Positions 7,101-34,843 of a stretch of DNA of 64,000 nt are shown piece by piece; the first letter of the stretch is position 1; each line of letters starts with the position of its first letter. The notes under the pieces were generated by a model that was given only the letters and a program-made list of their open reading frames with translations, was not told the origin of the DNA and did no database searches. The DNA is from Asterias rubens. Lineage: Eukaryota. Location of the stretch: assembly GCF_902459465.1 (NCBI RefSeq), contig NC_047081.1:12586001-12650000 (forward strand). Reading direction: 5' to 3'. Position numbers and translations under genes: made by a program.

Positions 7101-10100
7101 CTTCTAATCAATTCCATTCTTTGACTTTGAGAGCTTCTTGAAACTTAAAGTGTGAAGACAAAATGTGAAAATAGATTGGGAAGTCTGGCAGACAGGTCGG
7201 CAAAACCCACCTATGGGAGCGTATGAGACGTTCAAGTATGAGTCGTTTATCCATCTTAGTGAACTGCATAATGCCAGGAGTCTCAAAACGCTGACGTATC
7301 CAGTCACACTGATCACGGTCATTAATGAACATGTATTCAACTCCAATGCTGCGGCAGTACGTATCCTGTTAAAAAAAAAAAAAGCATTATATGTGTTTGT
7401 TCAATACATCGACCATGGTAATATATTCTAAATTCTATTGGTTGAGAATTCGAGAACCAATCACCAATCATGTGATGGTACCATTTTTCTCATCAGATGT
7501 AGAACAAACCATGGACCACATCAATGAGCTTATAAATGGACAATTCTTTTTACTATTGCCGTGTAAGCAACTTTACGAAATTGTGGCCTGATATTTACTG
7601 AAAACCTATTCCATGCAAGGCTCCAGTCTGAATATGGATTCGAACCAGAGTTCACAGAGAACATTGTGTTATATGTATAAAATATTACCTCCAAGCGTCT
7701 GATGATCTCCCTCAAGGGAAGAGCTGATTGTTCCCCACCAATGAACGTGGTCTGAGGCAGTGTAAACACCCTATCCATATCATGTTCATCTAGGAATAGA
7801 GGAAGAGAATAAGAAAACAAGGACTGAGGTACACAATACAAACTGTACTCAAACATTGTAACATGATGGTATTTTGATCCATTAAATTAGTTTGAAGGAA
7901 ACTTTGTGATGCTTCATTATCGAAAACTGTTTGGTTGTTGGTCACCTACAACACTTGTTGCATGTTTAGTTGTGAGGTGTTAGTTAGGTGTAAATCATCA
8001 ATAGGAAAAAACTATACGTTGTAGTTAGTTTCTTCCTATTTATTGAAACCATGCAAAAACCTCAAACAATACTAACACCATCAATGACGTTGCTATCCTT
8101 TCCACAGGACAAATTGCTGCCTTCTGGGAGCTTTTCAACATTCCAAACTGGTTTGTTCTTACATATTATAGGGTTAGCTTAAATTCTGTTAATTAAAGTT
8201 GTTGCGAATTTCAAATGCTACAACTCTGTGCGGATAGCAAAGCATTTGAGAAAACAAATGTATGCAGTTATACTGTTGGCTTATTGATACTTACAGGTTA
8301 AGGAAATTTCACTTAGAAATGACAAAGAATGAACATCTTTTGATAAGATTTCTTGATTTCTTTATTACAGTGAATAGTGATATTGGTAGAAAGATGAGAT
8401 GGTGAGTAGAGGGATGGATTAGTCTCATGATATGGTCACAAGTCTGCCCTTGCTCTGTGCAACAGTATAACAATATTTCATTTATACCTTGTTACTACTC
8501 GCCAAATGAGCTACAGTATGACACATGAACAATTATTTTAATGAACACAGCGACATTTAGACACACTTTAACACCACAATATACAAAAAAAGACTGTTTT
8601 TTTAAAGGTTACGCTGGTCTTTCATCAAAAAGTGGGTGAGGGGTTAGCCCTCACTAAGGAAAGAAACAAAGATAATAAAATGCAAGAATTTGAAAACTTC
8701 ACCAGAGCTGAACAAAAATCCCCCAAAAATGTTTGCGTGTTTATTTATTTTTCATTATTTTTTTTTATTTTTTTGGTGGGGGGGGGGGGAATGCTGAGAA
8801 TAGGAAAACTTAACCTCAAAAGTCAAGTGCTGCAAGTACGGTAATCTAAACTGTTGTCTTGATACGATCGCACAGACATGACAGAGCTAAATTGTTGTCT
8901 TGTTCTGATTGCTTAGAGCTAAATTATGTGTACAATGTTTAAGTTGTAACACAAACTGGCTTTAACCTAACCACTTGAAACCCATCAAAATCCAACAGAA
9001 ATTGATTGAAGACTTCACCTTCATGCAGAGAACTGGGCCCAATGTCTAGGTAGCAGAGCCTTGAAATTGGGCCCTAATCTCTGCTTCAACTGTACTGCCA
9101 TAATCATACTATATAGACCAACCATAATCAGAGTCCAACAATTTGGGCGTTGAGTTACAGTCATGTAGCATGGTGTTGGATTTTTGTTAGAGTCAGATAC
9201 AATCCTAGTAAATCCCACAAGGGACTTAATATCAAAGAAAAACTACATTACAATGTTTAGACATGAACAACATCTCCACCCCAACCAAAGTTCAATTTTA
9301 GTACATAGCTTTATGTCTGTCCTTATGACAATCATAGTCTACACTGTACATCTAGTTTTTGTTTGAGGTTTTCAATGAGCTATATATGGTTACTTTTCAA
9401 CTAGGCGCTTTATTGACGCTTTAGTCAAAACCTCTTATAACTGTGGCTAGTTTGGATCATTTCCAACAACTATTAGAACTCATGACTATCTATAACTGTG
9501 ACACTGAAATGCAAACATCAAACTCAAAGTCCAAGGAAAGCCCTACAGCCTTGTTCCCACTGTTGAAAGATAACAAGTTAATTATATACCAAATCTTTGT
9601 TTCCTGAACCAACTAAATGTACAGTTTCAGATCTCTCACTCTTTGCAGTGATATCGCAGGGCGGAGTTCAAGTTCTTATCATTCCTACATGAAAGAAGGT
9701 AGCACCCATACATTAATATTGAAACTCCCTCCCCCTCACCATAAATAGTTTAAAGAGTTTTACAACAAATTAGTATTTTAAGGGTATTTCAAATGACAAA
9801 ATGTGTAAATTGGTTTGTAAGGAATTAAGTACACTGTAATTAGTAATGAATGTCGTTAAATTAAGGAATGGTATGTGAGTATGATGTAAATATTTTATCT
9901 TTGTTCAATTTTGTTGACAGATCAATGCCACTTTCAATTTTCAACAGACACTTCCAATGGAAAATCTATTAAGTCTATTTAGAAATCTTAAGGGACCCCC
10001 AAGGCCAAGATCTGGGCAACTAAGGCGGCCTTCGGGTATGTGGCCTTCAGGTTTGTCAATGCATTTAGAGCAAGGGTCAATGCATGTTGCATTCATTCAT

Positions 10101-13100
10101 GACAAGACCTTGCAAATCATAATAAAAAAAACATTTGCAATGCAAACATGTACTGTACAGGTATGCATTGCAGAGTACACATTAAATGCCAATGCTAATC
10201 AACAACGACAATGAGACACACATCACTTCCCAGGTTTTTAAAAAAAAGGTGTTAAGTACAACAGCTGTATCCTCGCCTACAAAAATAATGGCCTGTCATC
10301 TATCTCTGGGATTTCCATTTATCTTCATGTCAATGATCATTGTATTGTACACTAGCCATGCTAGCAACACAGTGGATTGTACAGGATAGTCGGTTGGAGC
10401 GATTGATGTTTGGTATCATACACCATGAATTTTAAAGAGTACACAGCATACTCAGTGTTTCCTTTTCTGAGAGTACATGTATGTGCTTACAAACTCAAGG
10501 AAGTGTTTAAATATCAACCTGTGTGCCGAGGGTTGACCCATCTTTGAAGTGGGCGAGGCCATACTGATTGTTCAGATTGTTCAATAAGAATAAAGGAAAT
10601 GTTGGGAATAGTTTGGAACAGACAATGTGGAAGGTTGGCTTGTGTAACTTTATTCTGCTTTAAAAAATAATTGGTTTAAAAGCAGTTATCAGGCACAGAG
10701 CTGTGTCGGCCAACAATTTACAATTTGTTTAGATTGAACACCAGTCACAATAGGAGACTTTCCAACGCTAGGCAGCAGCAGACATACCGGGTAAATTTCC
10801 ATTGTTTACGTAGTTCTGAACATGCGCATAATTCTGAGAACAATGGATTTACCCGGTAAGTCTGCTGCCCTCTATCGTCCCAGAAAGTCTCCCATTGTAT
10901 GTGACATGGTATTTTAGCTGTTAACCTTAGTCTGGTAAGCATAACTTTGTTGTGCTACACAAAAAGTTTCGCTTTTAGCAGCTCTATGCTATTGAGCCTT
11001 GTTTTTTACCCAAACAAGATCTTTCTACAGCAAGCAAATCTTTGTTCCTACATTGAATCAGCCTACATGCAATGTATCAATTTGCAATTTATTAATTAGT
11101 TAGAGGCAATGTTTGAGTATGAACAGATAACAGGGTACATATGTGACTAACACTAATCGTCTTGACAAAGTTATAACTTTTTTAAAACAGGCATTAGTGG
11201 CACTACAAATGTCTACATTATTAGTGACTATGTGGACATACAAAATACATGCAGATGTTTGAGGTTATCTAACATGAGGATGTACATGACATACAGTGTG
11301 AGAGGGAACAGTGTGCGAAAACAAAGTAGTAAAGACTTTCATAGATCACTAGCGAAAATTAATGAAAGTTGGCTTGGTGAAAATGCTATAATAAGCAATT
11401 TAATTTTTCCTAAAAATGCCTGAGTTTGTTCAGTAACCCTAGTCATACATTGTAGTACGGGTGTGTTAAACCACAGACACAGTGGATATTTACCTCATGA
11501 ACACTTCACTCAATGATGAAGGCCCAACCTTTCTTTGCGGATATCAAGTTTCTTTTTGGATCAAGTAAAATACATAGTTGTCTGCAGTGTCATTTATTAT
11601 AAGTGAAAGTCATAAAAAGAATGTGTACTGTTATAAATGACAATGGCTTCACTTGTGTCAAAATCTGACCAAATATTTTTGAGGGCCCATTCTTACAGGG
11701 ACACCCAAAGTAAACTTTGACAATATCAAGTCAAAGCGTGTTAAATTCCCAATCAGTCTTTTGCTCAATTGCTATTTAAGCAATTCAACCTTTGTTTTCA
11801 TACTGACCTTCCAACAAAATTTGAAACACTCGCAGCAAAACCAATAATCTTCACATTCGCACACTGATGCCCTCGTGTAAGTGATCAGTGAAAAAAGGAG
11901 TCCAAGATAAAAAAGGGCATCCATTGTTAGTTCTCTCAAGTCACCTGAACCTTACCCATCTTATAATTCTTGGCCTCAAGCTCTGGTGGTATCTCACTGT
12001 TCAGATCTGGATTGTTGATCCCCAACGGATCCAACTTAGAAATATTATGGCCCCGAATCTGAAAGGTAACATTCTGGTTTAATCCTTGTTTTCATACAGA
12101 GTGTACTTAAAATGAAATGGGAAGGGGCACGGTGGACTGCCAAGGAGAGGGTCTCCAGACCCATTATATTTGAGAGTATTAACATGGAGTGACCAGTTGT
12201 CTTTGGTTACATGGTTGCTTGACACCATTTTCCGTCCATAAGATACACTTGTAACCCAATGTCCGGTCCAGTCTGGCACCCTGATACTGCAATAATGTCT
12301 GCCGATTGCCCTCTCTCAATATGCTGACTTGTTGTAGAGAACTTTAAGCTGACAATGTACAGTTATGTGTAATCACAGTTTAAAGTTCAATGTCAACATG
12401 TTTGGCCTTCCCCTCTGCAGTGTATTTAAAATCAGGGACACATTACAGGGGACCTCCATGGTGGATTACACAAAGAGTTAAGACTACTCTTATCTGCAAT
12501 TAGGACAAGACTTCTTAAAGACTATTGTACCTTAAGTTTTTAATAAGGAATAGACCCCCCTGGCGTTAAACTTGAAGGGGGGCACATCAATTTTGCTCTG
12601 GTCCGAGGTCCAAGGCACTTCTTTTGAAAATGTAAAGTTGTGTTGAACCCGCATCCCTTAGAAAGAGTTTTGCAAAAGAAGGGGCACCACTGTCAGCAGT
12701 TGCTGTTGGTGCCTTAAATAGTTCTTTAGTTGTTGGCCTAACCAATGTACATGTACCTCCATGGCCTGACATTACAATGTACAATGGTCATTGATGAGGA
12801 CTTGATAGATCCCCCCCCCCCCCCCCCACCTTTGAGGGATGAAGGAGGATCATACTGTGAGTGGGCATTCGTTTGTTGCTTTATAGCAGTACACTGGGAT
12901 CATTTCATACAGGAAACCTCCATAGGTAAACAAAGTGTACAGATTGAGGTGCACTTTGGAGGTAGATTTCTACTGACAATTTAAGGATTACACAGTTGGG
13001 CTAGTGGCCAGGGTTTTATCTTGATAACAGTTGATAAATCGCTTTATCTTTCTCCCTGAAAATGTACACATATTGCACATGTATGGACAAGTGGACAAAC

Positions 13101-16100
13101 CAGTGCCAGGAAAAAGTAAGTGCACACACTTACAGTACAAATACTATTAAAACACTGGCTACAATAGACCTTTATCACTGTGTGGTCGTCTTCATGTTAC
13201 TCCATTCCCACTCATTGTAACCAAAGTGACAGCATGATCATTGAGTAAGGACATAAACAAGGTCTTTTACAATGTCCAACCATAGAGGAAGAGTCCAACA
13301 ATGGTAGCACCTTGGTCATTAGTGTAGAGGCTTATAGATTGTACAACTATGGTCAACCAGCACATAATGTCATAAATGTTGAAACAAGAGTAAAAGACTT
13401 CTGCTGGTAGATTCCATCTCCCTCCTGCTATACACATACATTACGTTGTAATGAACCCGTCTCAGTAATTTGTGCCTTAAGTCATAAAGGCATGTCTGGC
13501 GCCAAGGATATCTGACATGTCTGATGCCCATCATGCCCACTGCCTGGCCAAGAGTTTCAGGAATTAGAGTTCAAGTATTCAATCCATATTCTCACTAAGG
13601 GGGGAAGCAAATTTGGCCAATCACTCTCAATTAAATCACCCGATGTTGAACATCACTCGTTTTTATATTCCATTAAATGTCTGTTTATTATATGCATTGA
13701 GCTATGAATTATAACTATCAATACTGAACACTGTTCAAAAGAGTATAGAATTCAACTAATCAACCTGCAATAGTTTGTTATAAAGCAGAAAACTTAAAAC
13801 ATTGGCCTTTTTGAGAAAATAATGATTTGGTATACTAATTGAGAAAGCTGGGCCCAATTTCAGTGCTTTGCTTTACCAGAGAATTAAAAGTTGGTTTGTA
13901 CTACAAGTGTGTACATGTCCCTTAAGTGTAATTTAGTAGCTTCTTTTTTCTTTTTTTTTGCAAGCTCTTTATTGATCACCTGACATCTACGTGTCATGAC
14001 ATCTGCAGAGCAATTTGTTCTGAGCCAGCCTCTTGAGGACTGTACATGCAAATTGGCTGTCACCTAACGTGCCATCTTAAACAGGCCCAAGGTCTGCGCT
14101 ACAACGCACTTGGCATTGATTAACCCAGAGCATGAGCACACACTCATAAATCTAGAGTCCTTACACCAATCACGAGTGCTGCATTCTGTTCTGAGTAATA
14201 GGCAACATCCCTCAGTCAAGCTCTAACATGTCTGACTAATTAACCACTGGTCTACAAGGGTAACCGGAGACATGCCTCTTTCCACGACTCCTCTTGAATA
14301 TATATGAATTTTATGTCATGTACATTCGTATTACACTTGTGATAAGTCAATTTGTAATTAAGTATTACCTGTGATAACATAATATTTTGAGTGCTGTGTG
14401 AATTAACAGAAATCACATGATGTACAATGTACACACACATCTTCTCTACAATCCTCACCAACCATTACACATTTACTGAGCACTGTGTTATTTAATGTTA
14501 TTGAAGGCACTTCCCAATTCCCTTGTAAACACAAATCTTACGCACCATACATTGTAAGCCTACTGTGTGCAATTTGTTACTGTAAATAAAATTCAAGAAG
14601 TTGAATTGGATTATAATGCAGTCTCCAGGATACAATGTATATGTGTTCAAATGTGTAGTGTGCATAATATCAAATTTGAGTCTGCTCAAAATTATGTGAT
14701 GTTAGGGACACTGTGCTGAGCAGACTGTACATGTACGTACAGTGTACCAGTCACTGTTCATCCCAGTGCAGCGACTTTTCTTTAGCTCGTATCATTTTTA
14801 GGCTTCTCTAGATGATCGTCATCATCGTTGAAGCTAGTATTGCATGTATTGATTTGAAATGGCCCCTTCTGATTTCCTGTTGGCATTCTCTGGCTAAAAA
14901 TAAAAATTTGTTTTGACGTGAGGTGTGCAGGTGTTGCCTTTAAGCTCAGAAAAAAGTAGGAGTTCAGATTGTACTTAGAAGACTCTGTTTCACATTAAAT
15001 GCAAATAATAGTTAACGGCTTGATGTTTTGATCCTATCAGAGTCTATTTCAAAGGCTAAATCAAACCACAACAAACCCAGACAATTTACTGGTTTAGTAA
15101 CAAAACAGACTTTTGTTTTAAAATCCACTGTCCTTTAAGATAAAATATTTAATAATGATTGACCCCAACCATCTTCATTCCTTCAATATCCTAAGAAAGT
15201 TTATGTTTCATTCGACTCTGTGGGACTGCACTAATCAATTTCAGTTTAGAAGAACTAAAAATACTACATGTAATGGTGGTGCCTTCTCTGTAGTAATCTT
15301 CAATAGTAAAGTGTTATTTATGGGATGTTCTACATGTATGTGTTTGGAAAAAATTAGTGGCCAACTTGAAATTATTAGATTCTTAAAAAAAAAAAAAAAA
15401 CGAACAATCAAAACAAGACACCTACATTAATGTGCAGCTCTTCACTCGCATCAAGAAAAAGTTATCATGACAATCTTCCAGAGTTCAATTTCCCCTACTC
15501 CAGGTATTTTGTTGATAATTACACCACCTTGTAAAATTATACAAACAGTTGTGTATTCATTTTACAAAATGTTTTGGGTTGAACCACGAAACATACTAGA
15601 TTGGGACTTATCTGAGCTATATGGCCCCATCTGAGCTACATTGTACATCTCCATGAAGCATGTATGTTGGCGGTCTCCCTACACATGCCCTAGTTTGTCA
15701 ACATGAATCTATAAATGTTTGAACCAATATTGACAGAATAGGGAGACTGCCAACATAAATGAATGTACATGCAGGGCGAGATAGCTCTTGGCATGCTTGA
15801 TAGAGTGCTGGCCTGCAATCTAGATGTCACAGATTCAAGTCCTGCTCAGGTCAATTTGTCTTGAATTGACTTCCCCAATCAGTTTCCCTTGTCTGAAGTA
15901 ATATTTTATAAAAAGACTCGGGTCTTTAGCATTTACACTAACTATGTCAGCATTTTGGGACTCTAATTGTTCAGCTCTGGTGTTTTGGTATGGGGGTGGA
16001 TGGAGTGAGGTTAGGCACTGGCCTTGGAGAGTTACCTAGGTTATAGTTCCCAGTGACTAACTCTGGTATGGGTCCTGTTGATGCTGAGCTGATTCCTAGG

Positions 16101-19100
16101 GGGTCAAGTTGGGCAAGATGGTGTCCCCGAAGCTACAATTTCAAATCAAGTTAAATAACATTAATTTATACAAGTAGTGTGTTCAGTTACTGCATTAGAG
16201 CCGAAGAACATCTTTTTAGTGAAGGGCTGCGATCAACAATACAAACTCATCCACACAGTAGGTCTGTAGCCAGCCTCTGTCGTTTCCGGAGATTTTCATG
16301 GTAGAAAATGTTTGCCAGTGTATATATTCAACCTAATTTCTTCCTAATAGGATTAGGGTTCAGGCAATACCAACCAACAAATAAACATTTCATTCATTAA
16401 TTACTGAAGACAATATTGTCGGGATCTAGAAAGTTGGTGTCCAAAACGTGGTATTCAATTTAAAACATGGGTTTGCAATATTCATGCATCCCCACCTTAC
16501 ACCTTCCCTCCATACTTAAAACACAAAATACAGAATTTGTAATATAATTCAATTGGCGTCAAACAGCATGTCTGCAATTTCCTTCATTCCACAATAGTCA
16601 GAAGGTGTATAATTTATCTTGATTGAATTTGATCAGTCCATGATGAATGTCTATACTGTAGATTTAAAGGAAATGCCTTGAGTACATTGTACCTCTTGAA
16701 TATAAAAACAAATGCTAAGTACATGTACTGTGAGTATTGTGTATTGTACAATGTACATGTATACGTAGGGCTTGAGTGTCTGACAATGAACTGAGGAAGT
16801 TGTCACACAATCAGGAGGTTGTTTTCCTTCAAAGTGTTGGGAGCTCAAGGTCTGACTTCTTTTAGAAAAGGCTGCTTTGAAGTACTGTACCGTGTCTGAT
16901 GTACAATACAAAACAGTGAATGTTCTACTAAAAGTACTTCTTTTCAGAGCTTTAGCTTTCACATGAAATTTTCAGATTTGTTGAAAACAGCCAGTCCCAT
17001 GAGCTGCTTGTATAAATCTGTGCAGTCCATTATGGTTTTAGCTCTAAGATACATGTACAGTAGGGGTGTGAGGATACCAAGGTATGGTCTGTAGTAAATA
17101 CTTTGCAAGCAAACAAGTTGTGAATGTATTCTTTCATTATAAATGGATTAAACAACTAATAGTTGTTAGTGCTTAACTACACTCACACAAATGTTATCAA
17201 TATGAGGCTGGAGGTCGAAATAGTATGCTACCAAAAAGGGAACAAGAACGTTGCAAGTATAATATGTTCAACAATGTATCGCAAGGGAGGGTAACCAGAC
17301 AGGGGAGACCATGATTTGGAAGAATTTGTACATGTACATTAACACATGGCTTCATTTCTGGTTGGGACTTAAAGGGCCATTTCTAAGCCAAGTGGTTTCC
17401 CACATTAAAACAGTTGTTAACAGGGCCCACTTTCCTACAACTGCTACATGTAAGTGGCTGATTCTGTGCTAACTGTGTGATTTCCATTTCCTAAGGCTGC
17501 TATAAACCATAGTGGGAAAAGAGCACCCTTCCAGTGCTTTCTCTGAAAAGCTATGATTTAGCAATGCAAATCAAAGGTAAACGGCTGTGAAATGCAAGCT
17601 CTAAAATCACAAGTCTGTGACCTGGGCAGACGCCACAGTTTAGAGGAGTGTGGAATTCAAAGCATGGGTAAATAAACACTATTTATATCCACATCTTCAA
17701 GAAAACAGACCTGATAGGAACGGATGATAGTCTGGACAGACAAGTGATCTTCAATAACTCTCCTATCCAAGGGTGCCCCCAAAGACCTCCCCGCTGGTGG
17801 AGTCATCGTCGTAGCAACGGCTTGTGTTGATGCGGGATACATGGTAGATACAGGAGGGGGTGGGGTGTAAGCTGTACCTGGGGCAGCACCATTTTGAGCG
17901 TTGCGGAAGAAAATGTCCCATGACTGCAAAAGAAAATTGCAAAAAGTTTGGTTAGTAATGCAATGTCTCTCTGAACTGGGTTACTATGACAGTTATGACT
18001 TCTGGAAATAATGGCTAAGTGGTCCTACTGGCTACTAGTTCATCTGGTTTTTCTGCTCACAGAAATTGGTATCTTGAAAAGGAATTTTAGGAGTTAATTT
18101 GTGTGGCCAAAAATCTCATAGGCTTAGCATGTACATGTACTGACTTAAATCAAGGGATGCGCCCCTCCAAAACCCTGTCACAAAGAATTTCAACACAGAA
18201 CAAAAAAGCTACACGTACATGTATGTCATTTTGACGACAAAGGATGCCTTTATCAGTAGAATGCCTTTATCAGTTCACTGTGTACAATGCTTAGTAACAT
18301 GCACAAAGATGCCAAATTCCTGTGAAATACGTTTGACGTACACACAGAATTCCCTGCTTCTGTAAGCGCCGATTCTGTGCTTAGGGTAAGCAGAGCAATG
18401 AAATTGGGCCCTGTAGAGGGCGCTATACTAGAAACATGTTGATAGTTTTTGTAGTAGTGGTTACTAATAACAAGTTAAAGTGACACATTACCTTGGATTG
18501 GTCAAGTTGGTCCATGAAAAACTTTTGGAACCGTTTTATAAAATTCATGGTTTGAAAGATGTTCAAAAAGTAGAAAATAATGTTCCACACAAATGTGCCT
18601 CTAAACATTGCGACTTACATGTAACACAGTCGTCATTTTGTGGAGTCATAAATTTGACTCCACAAAATGGCCGACTGTGTTAGTTCACCATTTATAAGGA
18701 AAACTGTGCAATTTCGAGGCATATTTGTGTGGATCGTTATATCATACTTTTAAAACAACAAAACTGTTATAATTGCTTTCCATGGAACAACTTGCCCCAT
18801 CCAAAGTAACGTGCCCCCTTATTCCAATGCCAAGTATCCAATGCCTACGTGTGGTACTGAGGACATTCATAGAGTTGGAGGAAGAGTTCCTTCCTCCATG
18901 GGCCATCCACATTGGTGGCTATATTAGTCTATGCTCTTACCTTAGTCTATGGCTTGCTATGGCTTGCTTATATTGGCATATTGGTGTTGCCAAAGAGGTT
19001 GTTTATTTACTTCACTTCCTTAAATGCCATCATGTAAATGTATGATGAAGTGGAAATGCAGCCATTATAGCTGTTAATTTAATACTGCCGACTCCTAATA

Positions 19101-19910
19101 TACTACACGGTTTGTCGTGGAGAAACCTAGCACTTAGCAGCCAGTAGATACAACCAGGATTAAAATAAAAATAGATCAATCTTGGTTCACTCATTACTCA
19201 TTCTCCGTCATGTCCGTAGTCTAGTCTAATGTGACAGTCAAAAGTGTTAAGAGTGTGCAGGTCCTACCACCACCAGGGTCACTTCTAAAAATAAAATGTG
19301 TTTGCACCCTAATATAAATATTAATAACAATAAAATTTCCAATTATAAATAAAAAATATTTGTTTAGTTTGACTTATATGTAAAATTCTGGGTTCATACT
19401 TTTTTAATTAAAACGTTCTACTCTAGCTAGCAAGCAACTTGTCTAAAAACACACAACATCCCCAACAATAGGACAACATTACAGGCAGAAAGTAGAGAAA
19501 TACTTGACCAGGCAGTGCAGTGATTTATACTTCTTGAATGATTGATAAAATAGGTAAACTCAAGACTCAATCAATCAAACTAAATAAATTATACTAGGAC
19601 CTATGTTATGTACACATAAACCACTCGGATGCAATTCTTAATCTTATTGAATGAAGATCACCTTATGCACAGATTTGGGATCTTCAAGCCATGATTGGTA
19701 CATTTCTTCCACATAGTTCGAGCTACTGCCGCTCAGAAATGGCTCTGCAGCAACTGGAGCTGCATAGCCTCGCCGGGCTTGATGTCCATTTGGCGGGCAC
19801 CCGGTAACTGCTGCACCGGGTGACCGTAACGTCCTGAGGTAGCGAGATGTGGGCCCCCGATGTCCAGCCTGGAGTTGACCAAACGTCAACAGCGTCTTAA
19901 AACGGTACAT
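1164..19910 (-). CDS. OGDH: 2-oxoglutarate dehydrogenase E1 component, mitochondrial (5' part; gene continues past the left edge)
   Basis: Exons read with GT-AG ends and consistent phases: 19662-19910, 17711-17923, [16036-16132 OR 11956-12058], 7689-7789, 7211-7365, 6629-6775, 6088-6178, 5528-5707, 5264-5392, 3150-3329, 2243-2395, 1730-1832, 1164-1280. Peptides include [54 protein letters not shown], the ThDP motif [10 protein letters not shown]...[12 protein letters not shown] and [12 protein letters not shown]. The N-terminus is Arg-rich, like a mitochondrial presequence. Confidence 0.97.
5036..5226. mobile_element. TA-flanked MITE (Tc1/mariner-type target)
   Basis: TA-aagcccagatcatacttcctgc...gcaggaagtatgaaccgggctt-TA; inverted termini extend into gaatgcgaagtgaat / attcacttcgcattc. 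Confidence 0.75.
10519..10563 (-). CDS. Candidate 45-nt in-frame cassette exon of OGDH
   Basis: aatcag|TATGGCCTC...ACACAG|gttgat is 45 nt, phase 1-1 and open ([15 protein letters not shown]), lying between exon 3b and the next constitutive exon. The donor is weak and the peptide is not recognisably conserved. Confidence 0.3.
10748..10897. mobile_element. Short palindromic MITE
   Basis: caataggagactttc...gcagcagacataccgggtaaatttccattgtt pairs with aacaatggatttacccggtaagtctgctgcc...gaaagtctcccattg. Confidence 0.75.
11956..12058 (-). CDS. OGDH: OGDH alternative exon 3b (103 nt, phase 0 to 1)
   Basis: tttcag|ATT CGG GGC CAT...AAG ATG G|gtaagg encodes [34 protein letters not shown]. Confidence 0.92.
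15664..15756. mobile_element. Small MITE; related half copy near 40240-40262
   Basis: Inverted termini atgttggcggtctcccta / tagggagactgccaacat. Confidence 0.6.
16036..16132 (-). CDS. OGDH: OGDH alternative exon 3a (97 nt, phase 0 to 1)
   Basis: ttgtag|CTT CGG GGA CAC...AAC CTA G|gtaact encodes [32 protein letters not shown], a paralogue of exon 3b. Too short for the ORF track. Confidence 0.9.
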
Positions 19911-21908
19911 TGCGAGGGCTGCTTAGTCCGATTCGGCAACAAGCCGAGTATCTCGAGATTCTGTCTTATAAAGTGAAACACTTGTTGCTTTAGTGGCTCC
20001 AGTTTAACGCTGGAACACCTCTTTTTTTCCTAGAGTCTACCACCCCGAAATCGCGGCGATGGGCCTGCAGAAAAGCTGTTGTTGTTCGCGTTGGAATCCA
20101 ACCACGCAGTGTAGAAACACCATCAACGCGCTGAAAACTTTACTGAACTTTCCTTCAAAAGGACAGCAGTGTTCTAGTGGTCAGTCACTGTGATGAAAAT
20201 AATGGTAATGATGTGCAGGATTCTTTTAGGACACAAATACTTCTAAAATATAACTAAGATCCATGAATTGGGAGTACAAGAAAGGTTCAACAAACTCCAC
20301 AAGGTTCTTCTTGGTGTAAATTCGGGCTGATCCGTCGTCGTGTGTGTGTGTGTGCACACAGGCGGCCGGCCTCTGCGTGAAAAGGCTTCGTAGTAGAAAG
20401 TACCAAATCAATATCTTTACAATGATGCAATGCCGGCATTTCCTGCTTGCTTAAAACTTATCCAGCACACAATTTCTACCACAGTTTGATTGATGTTGTC
20501 AGTAGAACTCTCTTCAATAATATATCCTTTTACTGGATACTGAATTCGGCAGACAGCTGGAAGAAGGCCGATGTGCCTTTGGTGGAATTTCCAAGTAGTT
20601 CATGTACAACAGCAACATGCGAATGTGTGTGTGTGTTAGAGCAATTATTATTGGGAAGTGATGTACATGTACATGTTCATTACATGTACTGTATGTACGA
20701 TACGAAGGGAAGAGACCGATAAGATGTCGTAATGTATATGGAACGCAAAATGGGTAAAACAAAAATAGTTTGTTTACACACAGAGAAGTTGCAGATTTTT
20801 GAAGTCCACTCAAATAATTTCAATGCTCTTCTCTATCGTGCAAGCAAGCACACTTGAGTATATTATTTGGACCAATGAGTATTTTTTATTCGGGAAAAAC
20901 ATTCACAAGTACGAATAATAATTCACAAGAACAGATTGACATGAAACAGAGTCACCTCCCTACAAAGTTGCCCCCTTACAGAGTCGCCACCTATAAATCA
21001 CGTCCCCCTCCCCTGTTTGAGAAATCTTGGATCCGCCCCTCTAATGGATTTTGGTGTACAGAATATAGGTAATGATTTGAAAATAAGCATCACAGAGAAA
21101 ACTATTGTAATCGGTAGTTTGGTACTCATCTCATAAAACTCATCTCATAGACAATGTTTCTGTTGAAGCCACACACCTTCCACCTTCGAACAGCATTCGG
21201 AGCCCATTTGAAATCTGGACTCATTGGAATTGGAAATTCGAGGGTAAAATACATAATATTTTGACAGTTTGGTGGAGGTTTTCTTCAATACTATTTTATT
21301 TTGGCGGGTCTTTTCTTTAATTTTATTTATTCATTAATTGTTCAATTAATTCAATAAATTAATTACTTCCTTATGATATTTATTATTTATATTTTGTACA
21401 TGTATACGGACATGGTCTTGTTTTAAATTATGAAAACGGACCCACCCCAGCCACAATGATTTTTTCCCAAACGACATTACACTATTTGTTTTCAGTTTCC
21501 GTCAAAATTGGCTCTTTTCGTCATATTGAAATTATTAAAATCTTATACCAAATCATTGCAAGGTCGTTTGGGAAAAAAATACCCCCCCCCCCCCCGGCTG
21601 GGTCCCAGTTCATAACATGCCGGTTCTATTTCAGCCCGTTTGGCAATCCATACTAAAAAAAAAATTCAAGGAATTTGCAATCCTTGTTGGATGGTTTGTT
21701 GCTCCATGCAGTTCTACGGTGAATGTTGTTAGTGAAATACATTGATTTAGAAGCACTGAAAACTAAAAATGACAGGAGTGTCGAACAAAAGCACAATATT
21801 TTAAACTCATTTTTATTCTGAGGTTTGGCGTCCCATAATAAATCCTGTTGCCCCGCCTTCACTCTTTATGCCACAAGAGGTCGCCCTCACTATTGAGTAA
21901 AAAATAAA

Positions 21909-24546
21909 ATGGCAACAATCAAGGAGAGGTTTGAGCAACTTGTTAGTGCATTTTTTGAGAATTTTACTTTCCAAAACGGGTTGTACAGGGGTCACGTTGA
22001 CGACAAACAAAAGTTAAAGGAGTTTGAAGATAATTTATGCCAACTTGGGCTGAAATTTTCAACGAGGACCTCAACTTACAGACAGGAAAAGGAGTGTCTT
22101 TCTGGTGAGTGAGTTCGAATTGGATTATTTTATGGAGGAGAGTGTCAACGGACGAATGTAAAAACTTAAGTGTGGAACTGAAACTCAGAATGTCTGGTGG
22201 TACGGTGGTGGTGGGGGAAACCGGTTAGGTTCCCACATGGTTGTTTTTTCTGTTTTTATTGCACTTTGATAAAATTGACTCAATAACGTGCAGATGACAA
22301 TGACAGTATAAATTATAATCGGGACCCGTAAAACTAATTATAGTATACCACAGCCACAATTAAAATTACCACGGCCACGGCCCCACACGGCCACAGCCCA
22401 CACCACCACAACCTGACAACAGTCAACAGTTCTCCATCATGCATGATGGCATGCCTTACACCACTGTAGTGCAACTGTCAATGTCATGACTGGCTGTGTC
22501 ACTGTGTCTGTCACACTTGTCAGTGTCAATATTTTATATATTAAAATTATTAGTATATTATTTTTAAATAATATGTATAATTTATATTTTTGTATTAAAT
22601 TATTATGCCTACTTTTTACTAGTTTTTCTAGGGGTAGATCGTAGAGTATTAACTTTTAAAAAGTGCAAGTTAGTGGATAGTGCTTTCAGCTTGTGCCTGG
22701 TTGTGCTGAATCCCTGATGCCCCAAGCTAGGCCCACTTGCTTGTCATGCTTGCCCCTTGTGACCTTGTTCTGTTGAGTTGTAAATGTCTCGATAGCTCAA
22801 CAAGATCATGGAATTGGATTTGGAGGCATGTGTTAACTTTCCACGAGATGCATGAAAAATGCTGTTTATCTTCCTTCAATTCAAGTACAGTTCCTATTAG
22901 AAGTTTGGGGACTCGAGTAATGGCATCATACTATAGTCAATTGGTTAATTGGTTGCACAACACTTTTTGAAAAGTATGATGAGGTTAGGGTTGTTTGTTA
23001 TATATTTGGTGTGCACCTACCTGTCCTCGTTGCGATAACAACCCTCTCCGCAGTCGGGATCGGGAGGAGGGTTATGTTATCGCAACTAGCACCTACCGAC
23101 CTACCAAGTATAGCTCTGCAGATTCTGAAGATTTTTTTTTGTTTCTTTCATTTGGGCTATTCTAACAACAATAAATCAATTACTTTTTAAAAATAACGTA
23201 ACAAATGTTGTCCCCTTCTTTGTGCTTAAAAATTATAACAGTAAATGATTCCCTGTCCTTAAACTTTAGAAGAGGAAATACCAACGCAGCAAGTTGAAGG
23301 AGGATCCATAAATACTTCCATCAGCGTGAACAACTGTACTTTAGTACAAGGAAAAACACAAGCCCCAAATGCTGGTAAATATGATTTAAACCACAATAGG
23401 GCGCTCTCACCACAGACCGCCATCATGGAAGTTTGCTCCCGTGTTAGCGGTTGTTAGAGACCTTATCGCAAATACTCTTTAAGCACGCTGTAGTAGTTGA
23501 ATGAGGTGCATCATGCTGTTTTGAAGTTTGATCCCTAGCTAGACGAGCATGCACATTCAACAGTTGGCGCTTGCACAGAGTGGGTATTTGTGAAAGGTCT
23601 AGTGTGATAGGCTGTTCGTGTTTGATAGCACCCTCTATTGGCGACTCTATCAGCAATAAAAAAAAGCCACAGGAGTAGTGAGATAATTAACAACAGGAGC
23701 ATTCTGAACCAAGACTAGGTATCATGAACAGATGAATACTTGGATGATTGGTCTGCATGCGTTGAGATCAAAGGGAAACATTCGGTAGTGGCTACCAACA
23801 CAGTCGGTCTACCTCAGGGTTCTGTATTTGGACCCATTGGTTATACTATATACACGTTACCTGTCTCAGATATTGCTAGACATCATAAGGTTTCATATCA
23901 CACTTATGCAGATGATACACAGTTGTATTTTTCATTTGATCCTAAGCAACCAAATAGCCTAGATACAGCATTGCAAACCCTTTCAGCGTGTGTTATGGAT
24001 ATAAGTAGTTGGATGGGAAAGAACAAACTTAAACTTAATGAGCAAAAGACAGAATTTTTGGTAATTGGCTCTAAACACAACTTGCGCAACATGAACAATG
24101 TCATTTTTACATTTGGAACCACTCAGATTGCACCATCAACATCAATCAAGAACCTTGGTGTATATTTTGATTGCAATATGTCTATGTCTTACCAAATAAA
24201 CCACCTTTGCAAGTCTGTTCGATTTCAGTTAAAAAAGGGGGTCACAGATACGGAAGTATGTATCTTCGCTCCAATGCAGATCCATTTCGCCTTACTTTTC
24301 CCATGACTCACAGTAAGGCGGGAGATCGAACATTCACTGTTTCAGCAGCTAAAGAGTGGAATGAACTTCCCTCCTATATTAAATCTGCTGAAACAGTGAA
24401 TGTGTTTAAGAAGATTCTTAAAACCTACCTCTTTCCTAATTGATTTTGTTTTTTGTTTTTATTGTTGTTTGTTTGTATAATGTTTAATTTATTGCTCTTT
24501 GTAAACGCTGTGATATGGTTTTACCATGAATAGCGTACCTAAATGC

Positions 24547-29445: not shown

Positions 29446-32400
29446 TCACATCTCTGAGTCACTGAGTAATGCAGTTGTCTCACCTATACTATCCCTTCCT
29501 GGTTCTCTTGACCTTTGACCATTCTGATTAAAAAGGTCATCTGGAGGTAATTCAGGTTGAAGGTCCGAGGGGCGATCTTCTACATACCTGTATTGCTCTG
29601 CTATGAGTAGAAAGACCAGGAAGTTAAGGAACATTATTCCCGCCAGGAGGAGGAAGAAATACTCCAAATGGCCGTTGTTGATTTCATTTGGGATCCATTC
29701 AGCTCCTGGGGGAAAGATTTGCAATGGATATCAGTTCTACTGCTCATACTCTTACATACATATTTACTGTGACTCAGTCTTTGCTGAGCAAAGTGTGATG
29801 TCACAATACTAATCACCGTGATATTGATTAATCATCTAATGAAGCCCAGCCAAGTACTTTTAATCTTAAGGTTGATGCGTGAGGCCATTAAAAAAACTAG
29901 TGCAATGGGATTTTGATACAATCAGTTGAGCCAGATTGTGGCATGGCAATGGAACTACGTAGAACAATTTCAAACACAGGAACAGGAATAGTGTTATTTA
30001 TCTTTTAAGGCCTTCTCACACACAACAATTTTAACAAGGAGGTTAGGAAATGCATCGCCTTTAATGTCTTACCAAATGTGATGGCATTGACAACAGTTAC
30101 CAGCAATGAGCCTAAATAGCTGCCGAGACCTGAGGCCAGTAGGCAGAATCCCATGATAACACCTTGCATTGATACAGGAGCCTGTGAATACGCAAACTCT
30201 AGACCTAATAACAAGAACAAAAATTACAATCACATTCATGTATCTACAGAAGCAAACATTTGGATTATTAATTTGTTATTTCTGATTGCAAATTTTACAA
30301 TGTTGCAGTACCCCCCCGACAAAAAAAGGATTGAACTGCCTCGAGCTACCAGGGCAATCTTGGTCTAGTGGTAAGGCACTGCTCTATAAAAGTTAAGGTC
30401 TTGGGTTCAACACCAACTCTTATTATGCAAGACCGGAAAGTAGGGCCTACTGAGTAACACACATCAGAGTAGGGTGAAGAGACAAATACATAATAATCTA
30501 ACAATTACAAACATATCTTGCACTGTTTATTGGTGACTTTTTTTGCCTATCAAGCACATCCAGCTTTAGTGAATTGGGCCAAGAAGTCTAAAAATGTTAA
30601 TTGAATGTTCTCAATTTGTCCATTTTTGTTTCTTCCATAATAGGAAAATAACAGAAATACTCACTTGTAATGCTTGCAAACACCTCACTTGCCCCGATGA
30701 ATGTATACTGTGGGATCTGAGCAAAGACAGACAGATCTGATGCATTGAAGATTTTACCAGCCACTTCTTGTTGAATGTAGCCACTCTTCTGTATGTCTGC
30801 TTTACGAGCAAACTCAATAGAAGCTGCTACTATCATGGACACAACGGCTAAGACCATCCCTACACCTACAATTTGCAATCAATTACAATTTTTTAAAGCT
30901 TGAACATTTGTTTATGACTCTGATTCGAGAGATCTGTTGGGGCCTTGAACATTTGGTATAAATTCTCCAAAGTCTTCAGCATTTGCATTGTTTGTTACCC
31001 TTTTGCAGATTAATGAAGGATAAATGGCCTTTGTAGTGACCTTCTTTAAAAGTGCTCATACCTTCCAGTTCCGGTTTTTTTGGCAATAATATAATATATG
31101 TATTTTCTTTTTTTGAGGGGGAGAGGGGGAAGGGGTGTGGTGATAGCTTTCTAACTTCACTCAAGGTGTAAACTTCTACCTAAGTCTTGCTTTTTCAATG
31201 CAAAGTAGAAAATAAAGTTTTATTGTGGACTTTTGGACCATTGAGGTTTTTTTTCCCTTTACTTACCGATTCGTTTCAGCTGAGACAGTGGATATCCCTT
31301 TCTGGCGAGGTATTGGTAAAGGAACCGGTCGACGAAAGGTACCAGTATGAGAATGATTAATGTGTTAAATAGGTTGAGTCCAGCCACTGGTATGGTGAAG
31401 CCGTTATACATCAAACGCATCCGTTCACCTTGTAGAAGATAGGTTGTATTCATCTGAAAATGATCAAAGTAAATTAAGTGTTTGTCTTATTTCACACAAC
31501 TATTCGAACAGTACATCTAAGATGGTCGGACACTTTAAAAAGAAATTATTTGTTGTAGTTTATTAGATAATTAATTACTTTTAATAAATACCTGAAAATA
31601 AACAGTCCAATAAAAAATCAGGACTAGGAATATAGGGATAAGTCTTCCCAGTGATTTAACTTCCTCTACTTTGACGTCTGAAAAGTGACCGCCATAGGAT
31701 GTCTTGGCCCGATCCAGCCAACTGTAGCTTGTTACACCAGCTGGTTTGGGTTTTCGAATCTGAGACAAGCCTTGGAAGATGATCTTGGCAACAGTGTTGA
31801 AGACACTCCCTAATCAGAGACGAATAAAGAGAGTGAGAGATCATCTTTGATACTTTTGTACTTGGGACTTTGGACATCTGCTGTAAATTTATGGCAACGT
31901 ATGTTGGGAAAAGTGATTGGATGAAAAAAGTCCTGTCTAAACTAAATGTTTACAGGATAGCTAAATCATTCTGTAACAAATGATGCAAGTTTAGCCAGCA
32001 ATCAATACAAATAATTATTAACAAAATATTCAACCATATTATACAGCTCAGTAGATTCAGATACAAGGTTCAAAAGGCAAAGGCATACACGTACATGTCA
32101 TTTCTTCTAAAATGCCATGAAAATATTCTCAACTGCTCAACAAAATTTTTGGTCTGATTATTTTCAATGGTACATATACCTTCAGGTGGCCTCATTCGAT
32201 ACCATTTACGTCCAATCATGAGAACCACAATTGCCAAGATTATTGAAACTGCAGGGATGGCAAATCCAACATCAAACCCAATCTCTTGTTGGACATAGGC
32301 GACACCAGAGAATGCAATGGCAGATCCAACATTGATAAACCAGTAGAACCTAAAAGTGTCACAATAATGTTTTAAAAGTAATTGTTAGCTTAAAGGCAGT

Positions 32401-33441
32401 GGACACGATTAGTAATTACTCAAAACAAACATTAGCATAACACCTCACTTGGTAACAAGTAATGGGGAGCTGTTGATAGTATACAAAATTGTGAGACACG
32501 GCTCCCTCTGAAGTAACATATAGTTTTGGAGAAAGATAATTTTCATGAATTTGATTTCGAGACCTCGGCATTAGATTTTGAGGTTTCGAAATCAAATCTC
32601 AAAGCATACTAACTTTGTGTGACAAGGGTGTTTTTTCTTCCATTATTATCTCGCAACTTCGATGACCAATTGAGTTCAGATTTTCACAGGTTTGTTATTT
32701 TGTGCATATGTTGGGATACACCAAGTGAGAAGACTGGTCTTTGACAATTACTAATAGGGCCTAGTGTCCAGTGTCTTTTAAAGCAGCTCTATGAAATTTC
32801 GTAGAGCTTCTGAAAGCTAAAAACATGGTGCTGAAAACAGTTCTGCTTAGGAAAAACAAGCATAACAAGTTACAAACTGTACTTGAGATGGGATAGGCAT
32901 ACACCTACAGTTTACCCTTTGCTGGTGAAAACTTTAATTTGAGCCTAAAGGTAATTTTTGTACTTTTAAAGCAAACCAACAACGTTGGACTTTGGTACTT
33001 ACCAATTAAAAAAGGATTTCACAGCACCTTCTCCCAGATCATCTAGTTGTTGAGCACCAAACGGTCCAACGTTAGATTTAATACCACCAGTACCAATAGC
33101 AATGAGGGTTAACCCACAGATAAAGAAGCCTTGTTTCTGCCCTACTGTCAGACCTAGAGTTTGGCCAAACTGGGTGTAGTCAATTGAGATAACTGGGAGG
33201 ATTGTTGTTCCTGTAGATCAGAAATAATACAAGATTGATCAGGTTGAAAAACAAACCACAAGGGAAACTAACTGTATGGAGTGAACAATAAAAAGATGAC
33301 TTGTGTCAGAGTTGGATTGGAACCTGTTGCCCCTTTATGAATCAGATGTTATCCTTTGTTTTGCTTTTATAATGTTTAGGGTTTTTGCCTTTTTAATGTA
33401 CAGCGCCTTTGAGCATTTTTTGGGATATGGCGCTTTATAAA

Positions 33442-33507
<66 letters not shown>

Positions 33508-34843
33508 CTTTATTATTATTATTGCAGTCTGCAGGTTTAAATCCTGCTCTACGATGCAGTCAAAAGTTGTCTATGTTCACCCTTATTTCTATATCTGACA
33601 GGAAAAGTTGTCTATATTCACCCTTATTTCTATATATGACAGGAAAAGCTGTCTATGTTCACCCTTATTTCTATATCTGACAGGAAAAGCTGTCTATGTT
33701 CACCATTATTTCTGTATCTGACAGGAAAAGTTGTCTATGTTCACACTTATTTCTATATCTGACAGGAAAAGTTGTCTATATTCACCCTTATTTCTGTATC
33801 TGACAGGAAAAGTTGTCTATATTCACCCTTATTTCTGTATCTGACAGGAAAAGTTGTCTATGTTCACCCTTATTTCTGTATCTGACATGTCTGACAGGAA
33901 CAATTTTCTTTGTTCACACTTATTTCTGTATCTGACAGGAAAAGTTTTCTATGTTCACCCTTAACATGCTTAATGCTGTATCTCACAGGAACAATTATCT
34001 ATGTTCAACCTTATTTCTGCTCACAGGAACAATTTTCTTTGTTCACCCTTATTTCTGTGTCTCACAGGAAAAGATTCTTTGTTCACCCTTATTTCTGTAT
34101 CACAGAAAAGTTTTCTATGTTCACCCTTATTTCAGTATCTCACAGGTAAAACCTTTGTACACAAGAAAAGATAAACTCCTGGAAAACATTCCGAGAAAAA
34201 AACATGTAGACCCCATAATACTTGATGACTGATTGTTCTTGTTTACACATTAACTTCCCTTTAACCTCTAAACTGATTGTCAAATTCTCAGTTCTCTTGT
34301 AAAAGTTTGAGATACCAAACGTTAATTTCACAAAGCACTAAGATTCATATTTTAAGATGTTGTCAATTGGCCACTTTATAGTGATTTGTGTCACTTAACA
34401 GACAGCATATCTTGCTCCAAGTTCATGGCACTGCTCTGTAAGTGAAATTACTAACAAAGTATAGGCTTACCTAAACAGTAGATGAGAGCAGCTCCAAATA
34501 TTGCATTGAATTTCCCTGAGATGGAGTCGGCAATCCATCCTCCAAACACAGGCACAAAATACGAGGTACCTGTGAAGATGAATGCAACGGTTGTGGCATC
34601 AGCACTAGTGTACTGCAACTCATTGGTGCAATACAGAACCAAGTTTCCCCCGATGCTGTAGTATGTCAGTCGTTCACAGAGCTCACAACACAGAATGCAT
34701 AGTACTACACCGATACGATCTCGCCGAATACCAGTTGATTTTGTACTATCTGATATTTCAACGTCAGATACGTTTGCTTTCATTTTCCTGTTTGGTTGAG
34801 GATAGTTTGAATTTGCACCAATCTCTTTATAAATGTTGGACAT
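29446..34843 (-). CDS. SLC15A4: Solute carrier family 15 (POT/PTR2) proton-coupled peptide/histidine transporter, SLC15A4-like, about 582 aa
   Basis: Exons 34471-34843, 33003-33210, 32180-32349, 31592-31809, 31267-31453, 30665-30865, 30073-30204, 29446-29705 total 1749 nt, in phase. ExxER motif ELCERLTYY, PTR2 signature GTGGIKSNVGPFGAQQ, FFNWFYWFINVGS, QIPQYTFIGASEVF, LEFAYSQAPVSMQG. Confidence 0.93.
32390..32781. mobile_element. TTAA-flanked Kolobok-like non-autonomous element, copy 1
   Basis: ttaa|aggcagtggacac...gtgtccagtgtct|ttaa; interior closely matches the copies at 35781 and 40967. Confidence 0.8.
33443..33522. repeat. (TTA)n microsatellite at the end of a LINE/SINE-type 3' tail
   Basis: Long TTA run preceded by cagcgcctttgagc...ggcgctttataaat; explains the spurious poly-Leu ORF 33441..33680. 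Confidence 0.9.
33562..34146. repeat. 41-bp minisatellite, about 14 copies, in an SLC15 intron
   Basis: Unit ctatgttcacccttatttctatatctgacaggaaaagttgt starts at 33571, 33612, 33653 and onward, degenerating rightwards. Confidence 0.9.

What the first reader, a model, noticed from the sequence alone, without database searches (positions are those of the whole stretch)
11956..16132. Mutually exclusive exon pair in OGDH at the Ca2+-regulatory segment
Seen: two paralogous exons, [32 protein letters not shown] (16036-16132) and [34 protein letters not shown] (11956-12058), both phase 0 to 1 with clean AG/GT, lie between the SYQ exon and the DEHDMDRVF exon. Including both or neither shifts the frame. 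Established: mammalian OGDH and Drosophila Nc73EF have mutually exclusive exons at this position, and in mammals they switch Ca2+ sensitivity. Inference: this invertebrate keeps an equivalent isoform switch. The exons are about 4 kb apart, so steric exclusion cannot enforce it; NMD or long-range RNA pairing would be needed. Neither exon appears in the ORF track.
Basis: partly seen in the sequence, partly recalled or inferred. Interest (0 to 1): 0.75.

Follow-up and report, generated by a model that had tools for sequence, protein, structure and literature searches.

The report
Alternative exon pair in sea-star OGDH
A sea-star gene for the Krebs-cycle enzyme 2-oxoglutarate dehydrogenase holds two look-alike exons, and each mRNA seen uses only one; vertebrates swap the same segment to switch calcium control, but neither sea-star exon has the calcium-binding motif.

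Summary
On the minus strand, exon A (16036-16132, 97 nt) and exon B (11956-12058, 103 nt) are paralogous AG/GT exons. Both run from phase 0 to phase 1 and both align to the same residues of human OGDH. They lie between exon 2 (17711-17923) and the next exon (7689-7789). Using both or neither gives a premature stop.

RNA data from two Asterias species labels show both exons spliced directly to exon 2. A is the major form: contig depths 33.7 and 59.4, and 27 reads. B is minor: one contig of depth 6 and one read. No A-B junction was listed. B is conserved in a more distant relative as an island that ends at its splice sites.

The window is an Asterias sea star (the neighbouring RSAD1 exon is about 98% identical to A. 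amurensis). Neither exon keeps the vertebrate DADLD calcium motif: B has NPDLN and A has no acidic cluster. The intron between them is 3,977 nt, so the vertebrate mechanism of a short intron with distant branch points does not apply. Frame incompatibility with NMD is the likely enforcer, but this is inferred.

Similar 3n+1 exon clusters sit at the same place in a bivalve, a beetle, a moth and three unnamed animals, but not in an isopod. This is a new member of a known kind, of moderate interest.

The parts
17711..17923 (-). OGDH exon 2 (213 nt, phase 0 to 0). Its donor is shared by exons A and B.
   Evidence: Sequence with its AG acceptor and GT donor. tblastn with vertebrate OGDH P0088, residues 75-137. 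Both RNA joints start at 17711.
16036..16132 (-). Exon A: 97 nt, 32 codons plus 1 base, the variant type with no acidic motif. It is the major isoform in the RNA sampled.
   Evidence: Joint 16132->17711: X1 depth 33.7; X4 depth 59.4 in a 3,343-nt mRNA contig; X17 27 reads from 22 starts; X18 1 read. The two differences seen in organism-B reads (16052, 16085) fall on third codon positions and are synonymous.
12059..16035 (-). Intron of 3,977 nt between A and B. It is too long for steric exclusion. It contains short pieces of repeats or abundant RNAs at 12460-12495 and 13162-13229.
   Evidence: Coordinates; depth spikes; no Rfam family at gathering score.
11956..12058 (-). Exon B: 103 nt, 34 codons plus 1 base, the canonical type with NPDLN where vertebrates have DADLD. 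It is the minor isoform.
   Evidence: Joint 12058->17711 (ends CT..AC): one X1 contig of depth 6 and one X17 read with 43 nt on the shorter side. An ortholog in L005 is 28/34 aa identical; DNA similarity of 98/119 stops at the splice sites. Codon changes are 11 synonymous and 6 non-synonymous.
7689..7789 (-). Next constitutive exon (101 nt, phase 1 to 0), the common acceptor for A and B.
   Evidence: tblastn with P0088 residues 205-245.
19662..19910 (-). OGDH exon 1 (start codon, presequence and conserved N-terminal motif).
   Evidence: ORF list; tblastn with P0088 residues 39-75.

Best explanation
This is the N-terminal part of the OGDH (E1o) gene of an Asterias sea star. Two tandemly duplicated exons encode alternative versions of the first ordered segment after the flexible N-terminal linker that binds E2 and E3. 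A mature mRNA takes one of them. Exon A, a variant without acidic residues, is the default in the RNA sampled. Exon B, which has the pan-metazoan canonical form, is a minor and presumably regulated alternative. Both exons are 3n+1, so using both or neither gives an early stop. Exclusivity at the mRNA level is therefore most likely enforced by frame incompatibility with nonsense-mediated decay, on top of regulated competition of the two acceptors for the exon-2 donor. It is not enforced by steric hindrance, by U2/U12 incompatibility, or by any RNA pairing that I could demonstrate. Shown: the exon anatomy, both upstream junctions, the lack of a listed A-B junction, and the conservation of B. Inferred: the role of NMD, tissue regulation, and any biochemical difference. 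The swap probably tunes allosteric behaviour or complex assembly of E1o. A vertebrate-style calcium on/off switch is unlikely, because neither exon keeps DADLD.
For: Anatomy and frames. Same place in human OGDH. RNA: the exon2-A joint appears in all four runs (depths 33.7 and 59.4; 27 reads and 1 read). The exon2-B joint appears in X1 (contig depth 6, about 15% of exon-2 junction depth) and in X17 (1 of 28 junction reads). In X4 the 3,343-nt mRNA contig goes from exon 2 to A and onward, with zero depth over B. No 16036->12058 joint is listed. Selection: the B ortholog in L005 keeps its frame, the NNPDLN motif and both splice sites while the introns are unalignable. Exon A differs from organism B only at two synonymous sites. 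All donors and acceptors are GT-AG U2-type, and the A-B intron is 3,977 nt. PMC7969005 lists reading-frame incongruity with NMD as a standard way to enforce mutual exclusion. The ordered part of human E1o starts just before this segment, after a flexible linker S41-L128 (PMC11436768).
Against: Use of B rests on one bubble-arm contig and one read. The junctions from A or B to exon 4 were not observed directly, because exon 4 lay outside the only 6-kb stretch allowed. Tissues and stages of the runs are coded, so regulation is unproven. One or two A-B reads in a raw run would not have been listed, so low-level double inclusion is not excluded. NMD was not tested. No biochemical data exist for either isoform.
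Confidence: 0.8

Rival explanations
1. Exon B is a decaying or noise-level duplicate. Its rare inclusion is splicing noise and makes no functional protein isoform.
For: B is rare: 0 in X4 and X18, 1 of 28 junction reads in X17, about 15% in X1. Its calcium-motif aspartates are replaced, giving NPDLN.
Against: B keeps an open frame, a strong acceptor and a strong donor. A relative distant enough for its introns to be unalignable keeps the exon at 28/34 aa, with 11 synonymous against 6 non-synonymous codon changes and identical splice-site flanks. B clusters with the canonical exons of other animals.
Confidence: 0.1
2. The pair works mainly as an unproductive-splicing (AS-NMD) device. Co-inclusion or double skipping is used to lower OGDH output, rather than to make two proteins.
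For: Both co-inclusion and double skipping give premature stops. NMD would hide such products from steady-state RNA.
Against: No A-B joint was listed in four runs. Protein-level conservation of B is not needed for a poison-exon role. Each single-exon product is in frame.
Confidence: 0.06
3. The exon2-B junction sequences come from a paralogous OGDH-like locus elsewhere in the genome, not from this gene.
For: The junction was laid at a likeness threshold of 90%.
Against: The joint runs exactly from the exon-2 donor at 17711 to the B acceptor at 12058, with GT..AG ends and the k-1 overlap expected of a bubble arm. No mismatches in B were listed for X1. The window has both exons in the right order and frame.
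Confidence: 0.03

Closest known systems
Vertebrate OGDH mutually exclusive exons 4a (LS1) and 4b (S1) (Denton et al. 2016; Kralovicova et al. 2021, PMC7969005)
   Same: Same gene and same protein segment, in the same gene order: variant exon upstream and canonical exon downstream. Both exons are 3n+1, and one exon is used per mRNA.
   Different: Vertebrate 4b carries DADLD, which is needed for calcium activation; the sea-star exons have NPDLN and no acidic motif. Vertebrates enforce exclusion with a short intron and distant branch points close to the 4a donor; here the intron is 3,977 nt and a normal branch-site-like motif sits near the A acceptor. Here the variant exon is the major form. Orthology of A with 4a is neither supported nor rejected (AU p = 0.39).
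Insect Ogdh (Drosophila Nc73EF) alternative exon cluster
   Same: Paralogous 3n+1 exons with AG/GT lie between the same flanking exons in the beetle Asbolus verrucosus (121 and 103 nt) and the moth Spodoptera exigua (118, 133 and 103 nt).
   Different: The insect variant exons form their own group and carry an insertion. The intervening intron in the beetle is only about 290 nt. I did not examine the Drosophila case itself, and found no paper on it.
Frame-enforced (NMD-dependent) mutually exclusive exons in general
   Same: Long intervening intron, U2-type sites throughout, and a combined exon length that is not a multiple of three.
   Different: NMD dependence was not tested here.
Docking-site/selector RNA pairing (Dscam type)
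   Same: Long introns could hold such elements. An inverted repeat (8700-8731 with 15951-15982, 32 nt, 78% complementary) would loop out exon B.
   Different: No pairing stood out from random intronic windows. No intronic conservation next to B was found in L005. Covariation could not be tested.

Membership tests
Mutually exclusive exon pair made by tandem exon duplication | Neighbouring exons that are paralogous, of similar length and of the same phase | tested here: met
   97 and 103 nt, both phase 0 to 1. Each is the other's only significant tblastn hit in the window.
Mutually exclusive exon pair made by tandem exon duplication | Each exon is spliced to the common upstream exon in RNA | tested here: met
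   Joints 16132->17711 and 12058->17711 with GT..AG ends. Support for B is one contig plus one read.
Mutually exclusive exon pair made by tandem exon duplication | Each exon is spliced to the common downstream exon | tested here: inconclusive
   Exon 4 lay outside the laid stretch. For A, a 3,343-nt mRNA contig continues past A without B. For B, this was not observed.
Mutually exclusive exon pair made by tandem exon duplication | The two exons are not found together in mature mRNA | tested here: met
   No 16036->12058 joint was listed in four runs. Depth limits this to roughly under 10% of junction reads in X17.
Vertebrate-type OGDH calcium switch (4a/4b) | The swapped exon encodes the segment that holds the calcium site of E1o | tested here: met
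   Both exons align to 7wgr_A residues 11-39, which include DADLD.
Vertebrate-type OGDH calcium switch (4a/4b) | One exon carries the DADLD (DxDxD) motif | tested here: not met
   B has NPDLN (also NNPDLN in L005) and A has SSASTG.
Vertebrate-type OGDH calcium switch (4a/4b) | A short intervening intron with distant branch points near the upstream donor | tested here: not met
   The intron is 3,977 nt. The defining features are taken from PMC7969005.
Vertebrate-type OGDH calcium switch (4a/4b) | Exon A is orthologous to 4a and exon B to 4b | tested here: inconclusive
   The tree on 34 columns is unresolved. AU tests reject neither A+4a (p = 0.39) nor A+B (p = 0.26).
Vertebrate-type OGDH calcium switch (4a/4b) | The isoforms differ in calcium sensitivity | not testable with these tools
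   This needs enzyme kinetics of recombinant isoforms.
Docking/selector RNA-structure control | Conserved complementary intronic elements next to the variable exons | tested here: inconclusive
   The best local helix between the exon-2 downstream flank and the B upstream flank is -25 to -26 kcal/mol, and 3 of 31 random intronic windows do as well. There are inverted repeats, but no relatives were available for a covariation test.

The most novel reading that the evidence does not exclude
The OGDH exon pair is not a vertebrate invention. It is one ancient isoform switch that predates the protostome-deuterostome split. It was retained in sea stars, bivalves, insects and vertebrates and lost in lineages such as isopods. 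On this reading, the vertebrate calcium on/off switch was grafted onto an older pan-bilaterian switch whose original function is unknown. One hint: the variant exons of Asterias, the bivalve Tegillarca and locus L001 all keep the ancestral-looking RGHHLA start and a ...YN(L/M/F) end, while their canonical partners share a derived GH(N/S)I start.
Probability: 0.25. Interest if true: 0.65.

Novelty: new member of a known kind. Interest (0 to 1): 0.45.

Why it matters
OGDH exon 4a/4b is a well-studied example of mutually exclusive splicing with a clear biochemical output: calcium activation of a rate-limiting Krebs-cycle step. Published work treats the duplication as a vertebrate story, and names a mollusc and a sponge that have the motif without the duplication (PMC7969005). 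An echinoderm pair that is expressed and conserved changes that picture, as do look-alike clusters in a bivalve, a beetle and a moth. Either this exon has been duplicated into an alternative pair again and again, or the pair is much older than thought. Both readings can be tested with existing genomes and RNA-seq. The sea-star pair lacks the calcium motif and the short intron. It therefore offers a natural contrast for two questions: what the segment does besides binding calcium, and how exclusion is enforced across a 4-kb intron.

Tried and rejected
1. I tried to reach named full-length echinoderm OGDH proteins through a scaffold alignment of P0088 plus the window's exons. MAFFT scattered the fragments, so I did not use the alignment.
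2. Look-ups of P0002 (Lytechinus pictus fragment) and P0006 returned no DNA.
3. Denton et al. 2016 (PMC6101200) and McCormack & Denton 1981 (PMC1163036) are not held. What I say about them comes from PMC7969005 or from memory.
I resent it as the 46-aa in-frame genomic stretch around exon B.
5. In the docking/selector search, whole-flank duplex energies gave one apparent outlier, exon-2 downstream flank against B upstream flank, 0 of 100 shuffles. Its best local helix is matched by 3 of 31 random intronic windows, so I rejected it as evidence.
6. The inverted repeat 8700-8731 / 15951-15982 has no other copy in the window within three mismatches, but I could not test it for conservation.
7. Rfam returned nothing above gathering score in 7600-20000.
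8. The exon phylogeny and AU tests were uninformative.
9. U2/U12 incompatibility is rejected, because all sites are GT-AG of U2 type. Steric exclusion is rejected on intron length.
Full report
**Observation**

The minus strand of the window carries the 5' 60% of an OGDH (E1o) gene. It starts at exon 1 (about 19910-19662) and runs off the low end of the window.

Exon 2 is 17923-17711, 213 nt, phase 0 to 0. Exon A is 16132-16036 and exon B is 12058-11956. Both have an AG directly upstream and a GT directly downstream. The next exon starts at 7789 and needs one base carried over.

Spliced in silico, exon2+A+exon4 and exon2+B+exon4 are open. A and B together stop four codons into B. Skipping both shifts the frame into a stop.

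Each peptive hits only human OGDH among solved structures, and at the same residues: 7wgr_A 11-28 for A and 11-39 for B. In the whole window, each exon's only significant hit apart from itself is the other, and there is no third copy.

**Organism**

The closest named match to exon 2 is a Lytechinus pictus fragment at 63-66% identity. The large exon of the neighbouring RSAD1-like gene (37546-38607, minus strand) has about 7 differences in 313 residues from Asterias amurensis. It is 58-60% identical to Patiria and Acanthaster.

The window is therefore an Asterias sea star. The coded 'organism B' is a congener, judged from the share of sampled words it holds (0.24-0.26 of the 6-kb stretch; 0.71 of exon A).

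**RNA evidence**

I laid window:11900-17899, which covers most of exon 2, exon A and exon B, on four runs. Two were contig sets of organism A (X1, X4) and two were raw RNA-seq runs of organism B (X17, X18).

The exon2-A joint (16132->17711, skipping 1,578 nt, ends CT..AC, which is GT..AG on the minus strand) is present in all four runs:

| Run | Exon2-A joint | Exon2-B joint |
|---|---|---|
| X1 | depth 33.7 | one contig, depth 6 |
| X4 | depth 59.4, in a 3,343-nt mRNA contig | none |
| X17 | 27 reads from 22 starts | one read, 43 nt on the shorter side |
| X18 | 1 read | none |

The exon2-B joint (12058->17711, skipping 5,652 nt, same ends) has 26+4 letters on the exon-2 side in X1. That is the k-1 overlap expected of a bubble arm.

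X4 has zero depth over B, so its long mRNA contig goes from A onward without B. No A-to-B joint was listed.

A is therefore the major form and B a minor one, at about 15% in X1 and 4% in X17. The junctions to exon 4 lay outside the stretch, and tissue identities are coded. This is the main gap in the evidence.

**Selection**

In organism-B reads, exon A differs from the window at 16052 and 16085. Both are third codon positions and both changes are synonymous (my reading of the codons).

A protein search with the in-frame genomic stretch around B found one relative (P0183, locus L005, a 553-nt metagenome contig). Its exon is 28/34 identical and keeps NNPDLN, the tttcag acceptor and the gtaagg donor. 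DNA similarity (98/119) stops at the splice sites and the introns do not align. Codon changes are 11 synonymous against 6 non-synonymous.

B is therefore a conserved exon, not a decaying copy.

**Comparison with vertebrates**

In vertebrates the same segment is encoded by mutually exclusive exons. The upstream one is 4a (LS1, calcium-insensitive). The downstream one is 4b (S1, with the DADLD motif needed for calcium activation). Exclusion is enforced by distant branch points in a short intron (PMC7969005).

Fragments in the representative library show the two vertebrate exon types. Sea-star B has the pan-metazoan canonical shape, but with NPDLN in place of DADLD. A has no acidic cluster.

The A-B intron is 3,977 nt. 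All splice sites are U2-type GT-AG, and a branch-site-like motif sits about 15-19 nt upstream of the A acceptor. Steric exclusion and U2/U12 incompatibility are therefore out.

My in-silico search for docking/selector pairing gave nothing beyond what random intronic windows give. Rfam found no family at gathering score. Frame incompatibility with NMD, which PMC7969005 lists among the standard mechanisms, is the best-supported enforcer. It is inferred, not shown.

**Protein context**

In the human E1o structure, the ordered model begins just before this segment, after a flexible N-terminal linker (S41-L128) that binds E2o and E3 (PMC11436768). The swap therefore changes the hinge between the tether and the catalytic core.

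From memory, not checked here, McCormack and Denton (1981) found calcium sensitivity of the complex in vertebrates but not in insects. Together with the missing DADLD, this makes a vertebrate-style calcium switch unlikely in the sea star. A difference in allosteric tuning or in assembly is my inference.

**How widespread**

I fetched genomic loci through exon-2 ORF fragments and scanned them with the exon peptides. In every case listed as present, the exons are paralogous, have an AG acceptor and a GT donor, have a length of 3n+1, and lie just downstream of exon 2; the next exon was found downstream only in Spodoptera.

| Locus | Organism | Exons at this place |
|---|---|---|
| L007 | Tegillarca granosa (bivalve) | canonical 103 nt, then variant 106 nt |
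| L006 | Asbolus verrucosus (beetle) | variant 121 nt, then canonical 103 nt |
| L008 | Spodoptera exigua (moth) | three exons: 118, 133 and 103 nt |
| L001, L002, L004 | unnamed metagenome-derived animal contigs | two exons each |
| L009 | Armadillidium nasatum (isopod) | a single exon |
| L010 | unnamed | a single exon, fused to exon 2 |

PMC7969005 reports no duplication in Lottia or Amphimedon.

The order of variant and canonical exons differs between lineages. A tree of the exons (34 columns) is unresolved. AU tests reject neither A with vertebrate 4a (p = 0.39) nor A with its own partner B (p = 0.26).

So this exon has either been duplicated into an alternative pair repeatedly, or the pair is very old and has been rearranged or lost many times. 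I lean towards recurrent duplication, at about 3:1.

**Verdict**

The pair is real, expressed and conserved. Functionally it is a mutually exclusive pair, with A as the default. It is a new member of a known kind: the same gene and the same segment as the vertebrate 4a/4b pair, but without the calcium motif and with a different way of enforcing exclusion. I did not find it described in the literature I could search. It may already appear as isoforms in genome annotation, which I could not check.

Noticed in passing
window 12460-12495 and 13162-13229 (inside the A-B intron): Two short pieces (35 and 68 nt) have enormous depth in all four RNA runs: assembler depths up to about 6e4, and hundreds of raw reads. 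Their loose ends run into other sequence. The flanks of the 68-nt piece are nearly constant (agreement 0.97-0.99). These are fragments shared with a very abundant RNA or a very common repeat elsewhere in the genome. No Rfam family matched.
   Followed up: partly
L008 17069-20306 (Spodoptera exigua, GCA_022117675.1): Three paralogous 3n+1 exons (118, 133 and 103 nt) lie between OGDH exon 2 and the next exon. The deposited annotation splits the gene into two models at this cluster.
   Followed up: partly
L001 13359-13461 and 15135-15237 (ENA ERZ25069853, 479-kb contig, organism unknown): An OGDH exon pair, both 103 nt, in which the canonical exon is upstream and the variant downstream, the reverse of Asterias. 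Yet its canonical exon groups with Asterias B (support 90/78). The organism's identity and the reason for the reversed order are unexplained.
   Followed up: partly
window 8700-8731 and 15951-15982: A 32-nt inverted repeat, 78% complementary. One arm lies 54-85 nt downstream of the exon A donor. The other lies about 0.9 kb upstream of the exon-4 acceptor. Pairing would loop out exon B. It has no other copy in the window within three mismatches, and its conservation is untested.
   Followed up: partly
window 23740-24306 (+): A 188-aa ORF with a YADD motif that looks like a reverse-transcriptase fragment of a retroelement, lying between OGDH and the next gene.
   Followed up: no
window 33400-34200 (+): A run of about 41-nt tandem units, which gives many overlapping short ORFs with the same peptide, next to a long poly-Tyr/poly-Leu-coding simple repeat. 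It lies inside the multi-exon minus-strand gene at 29446-34843, whose ORFs look to me like a peptide/histidine transporter (not checked).
   Followed up: no
window 37543-39137 (-): An RSAD1-like (HemN-type radical SAM) gene in two large exons. Its exon part is about 98% identical to the Asterias amurensis protein. I used it here only to place the organism.
   Followed up: partly
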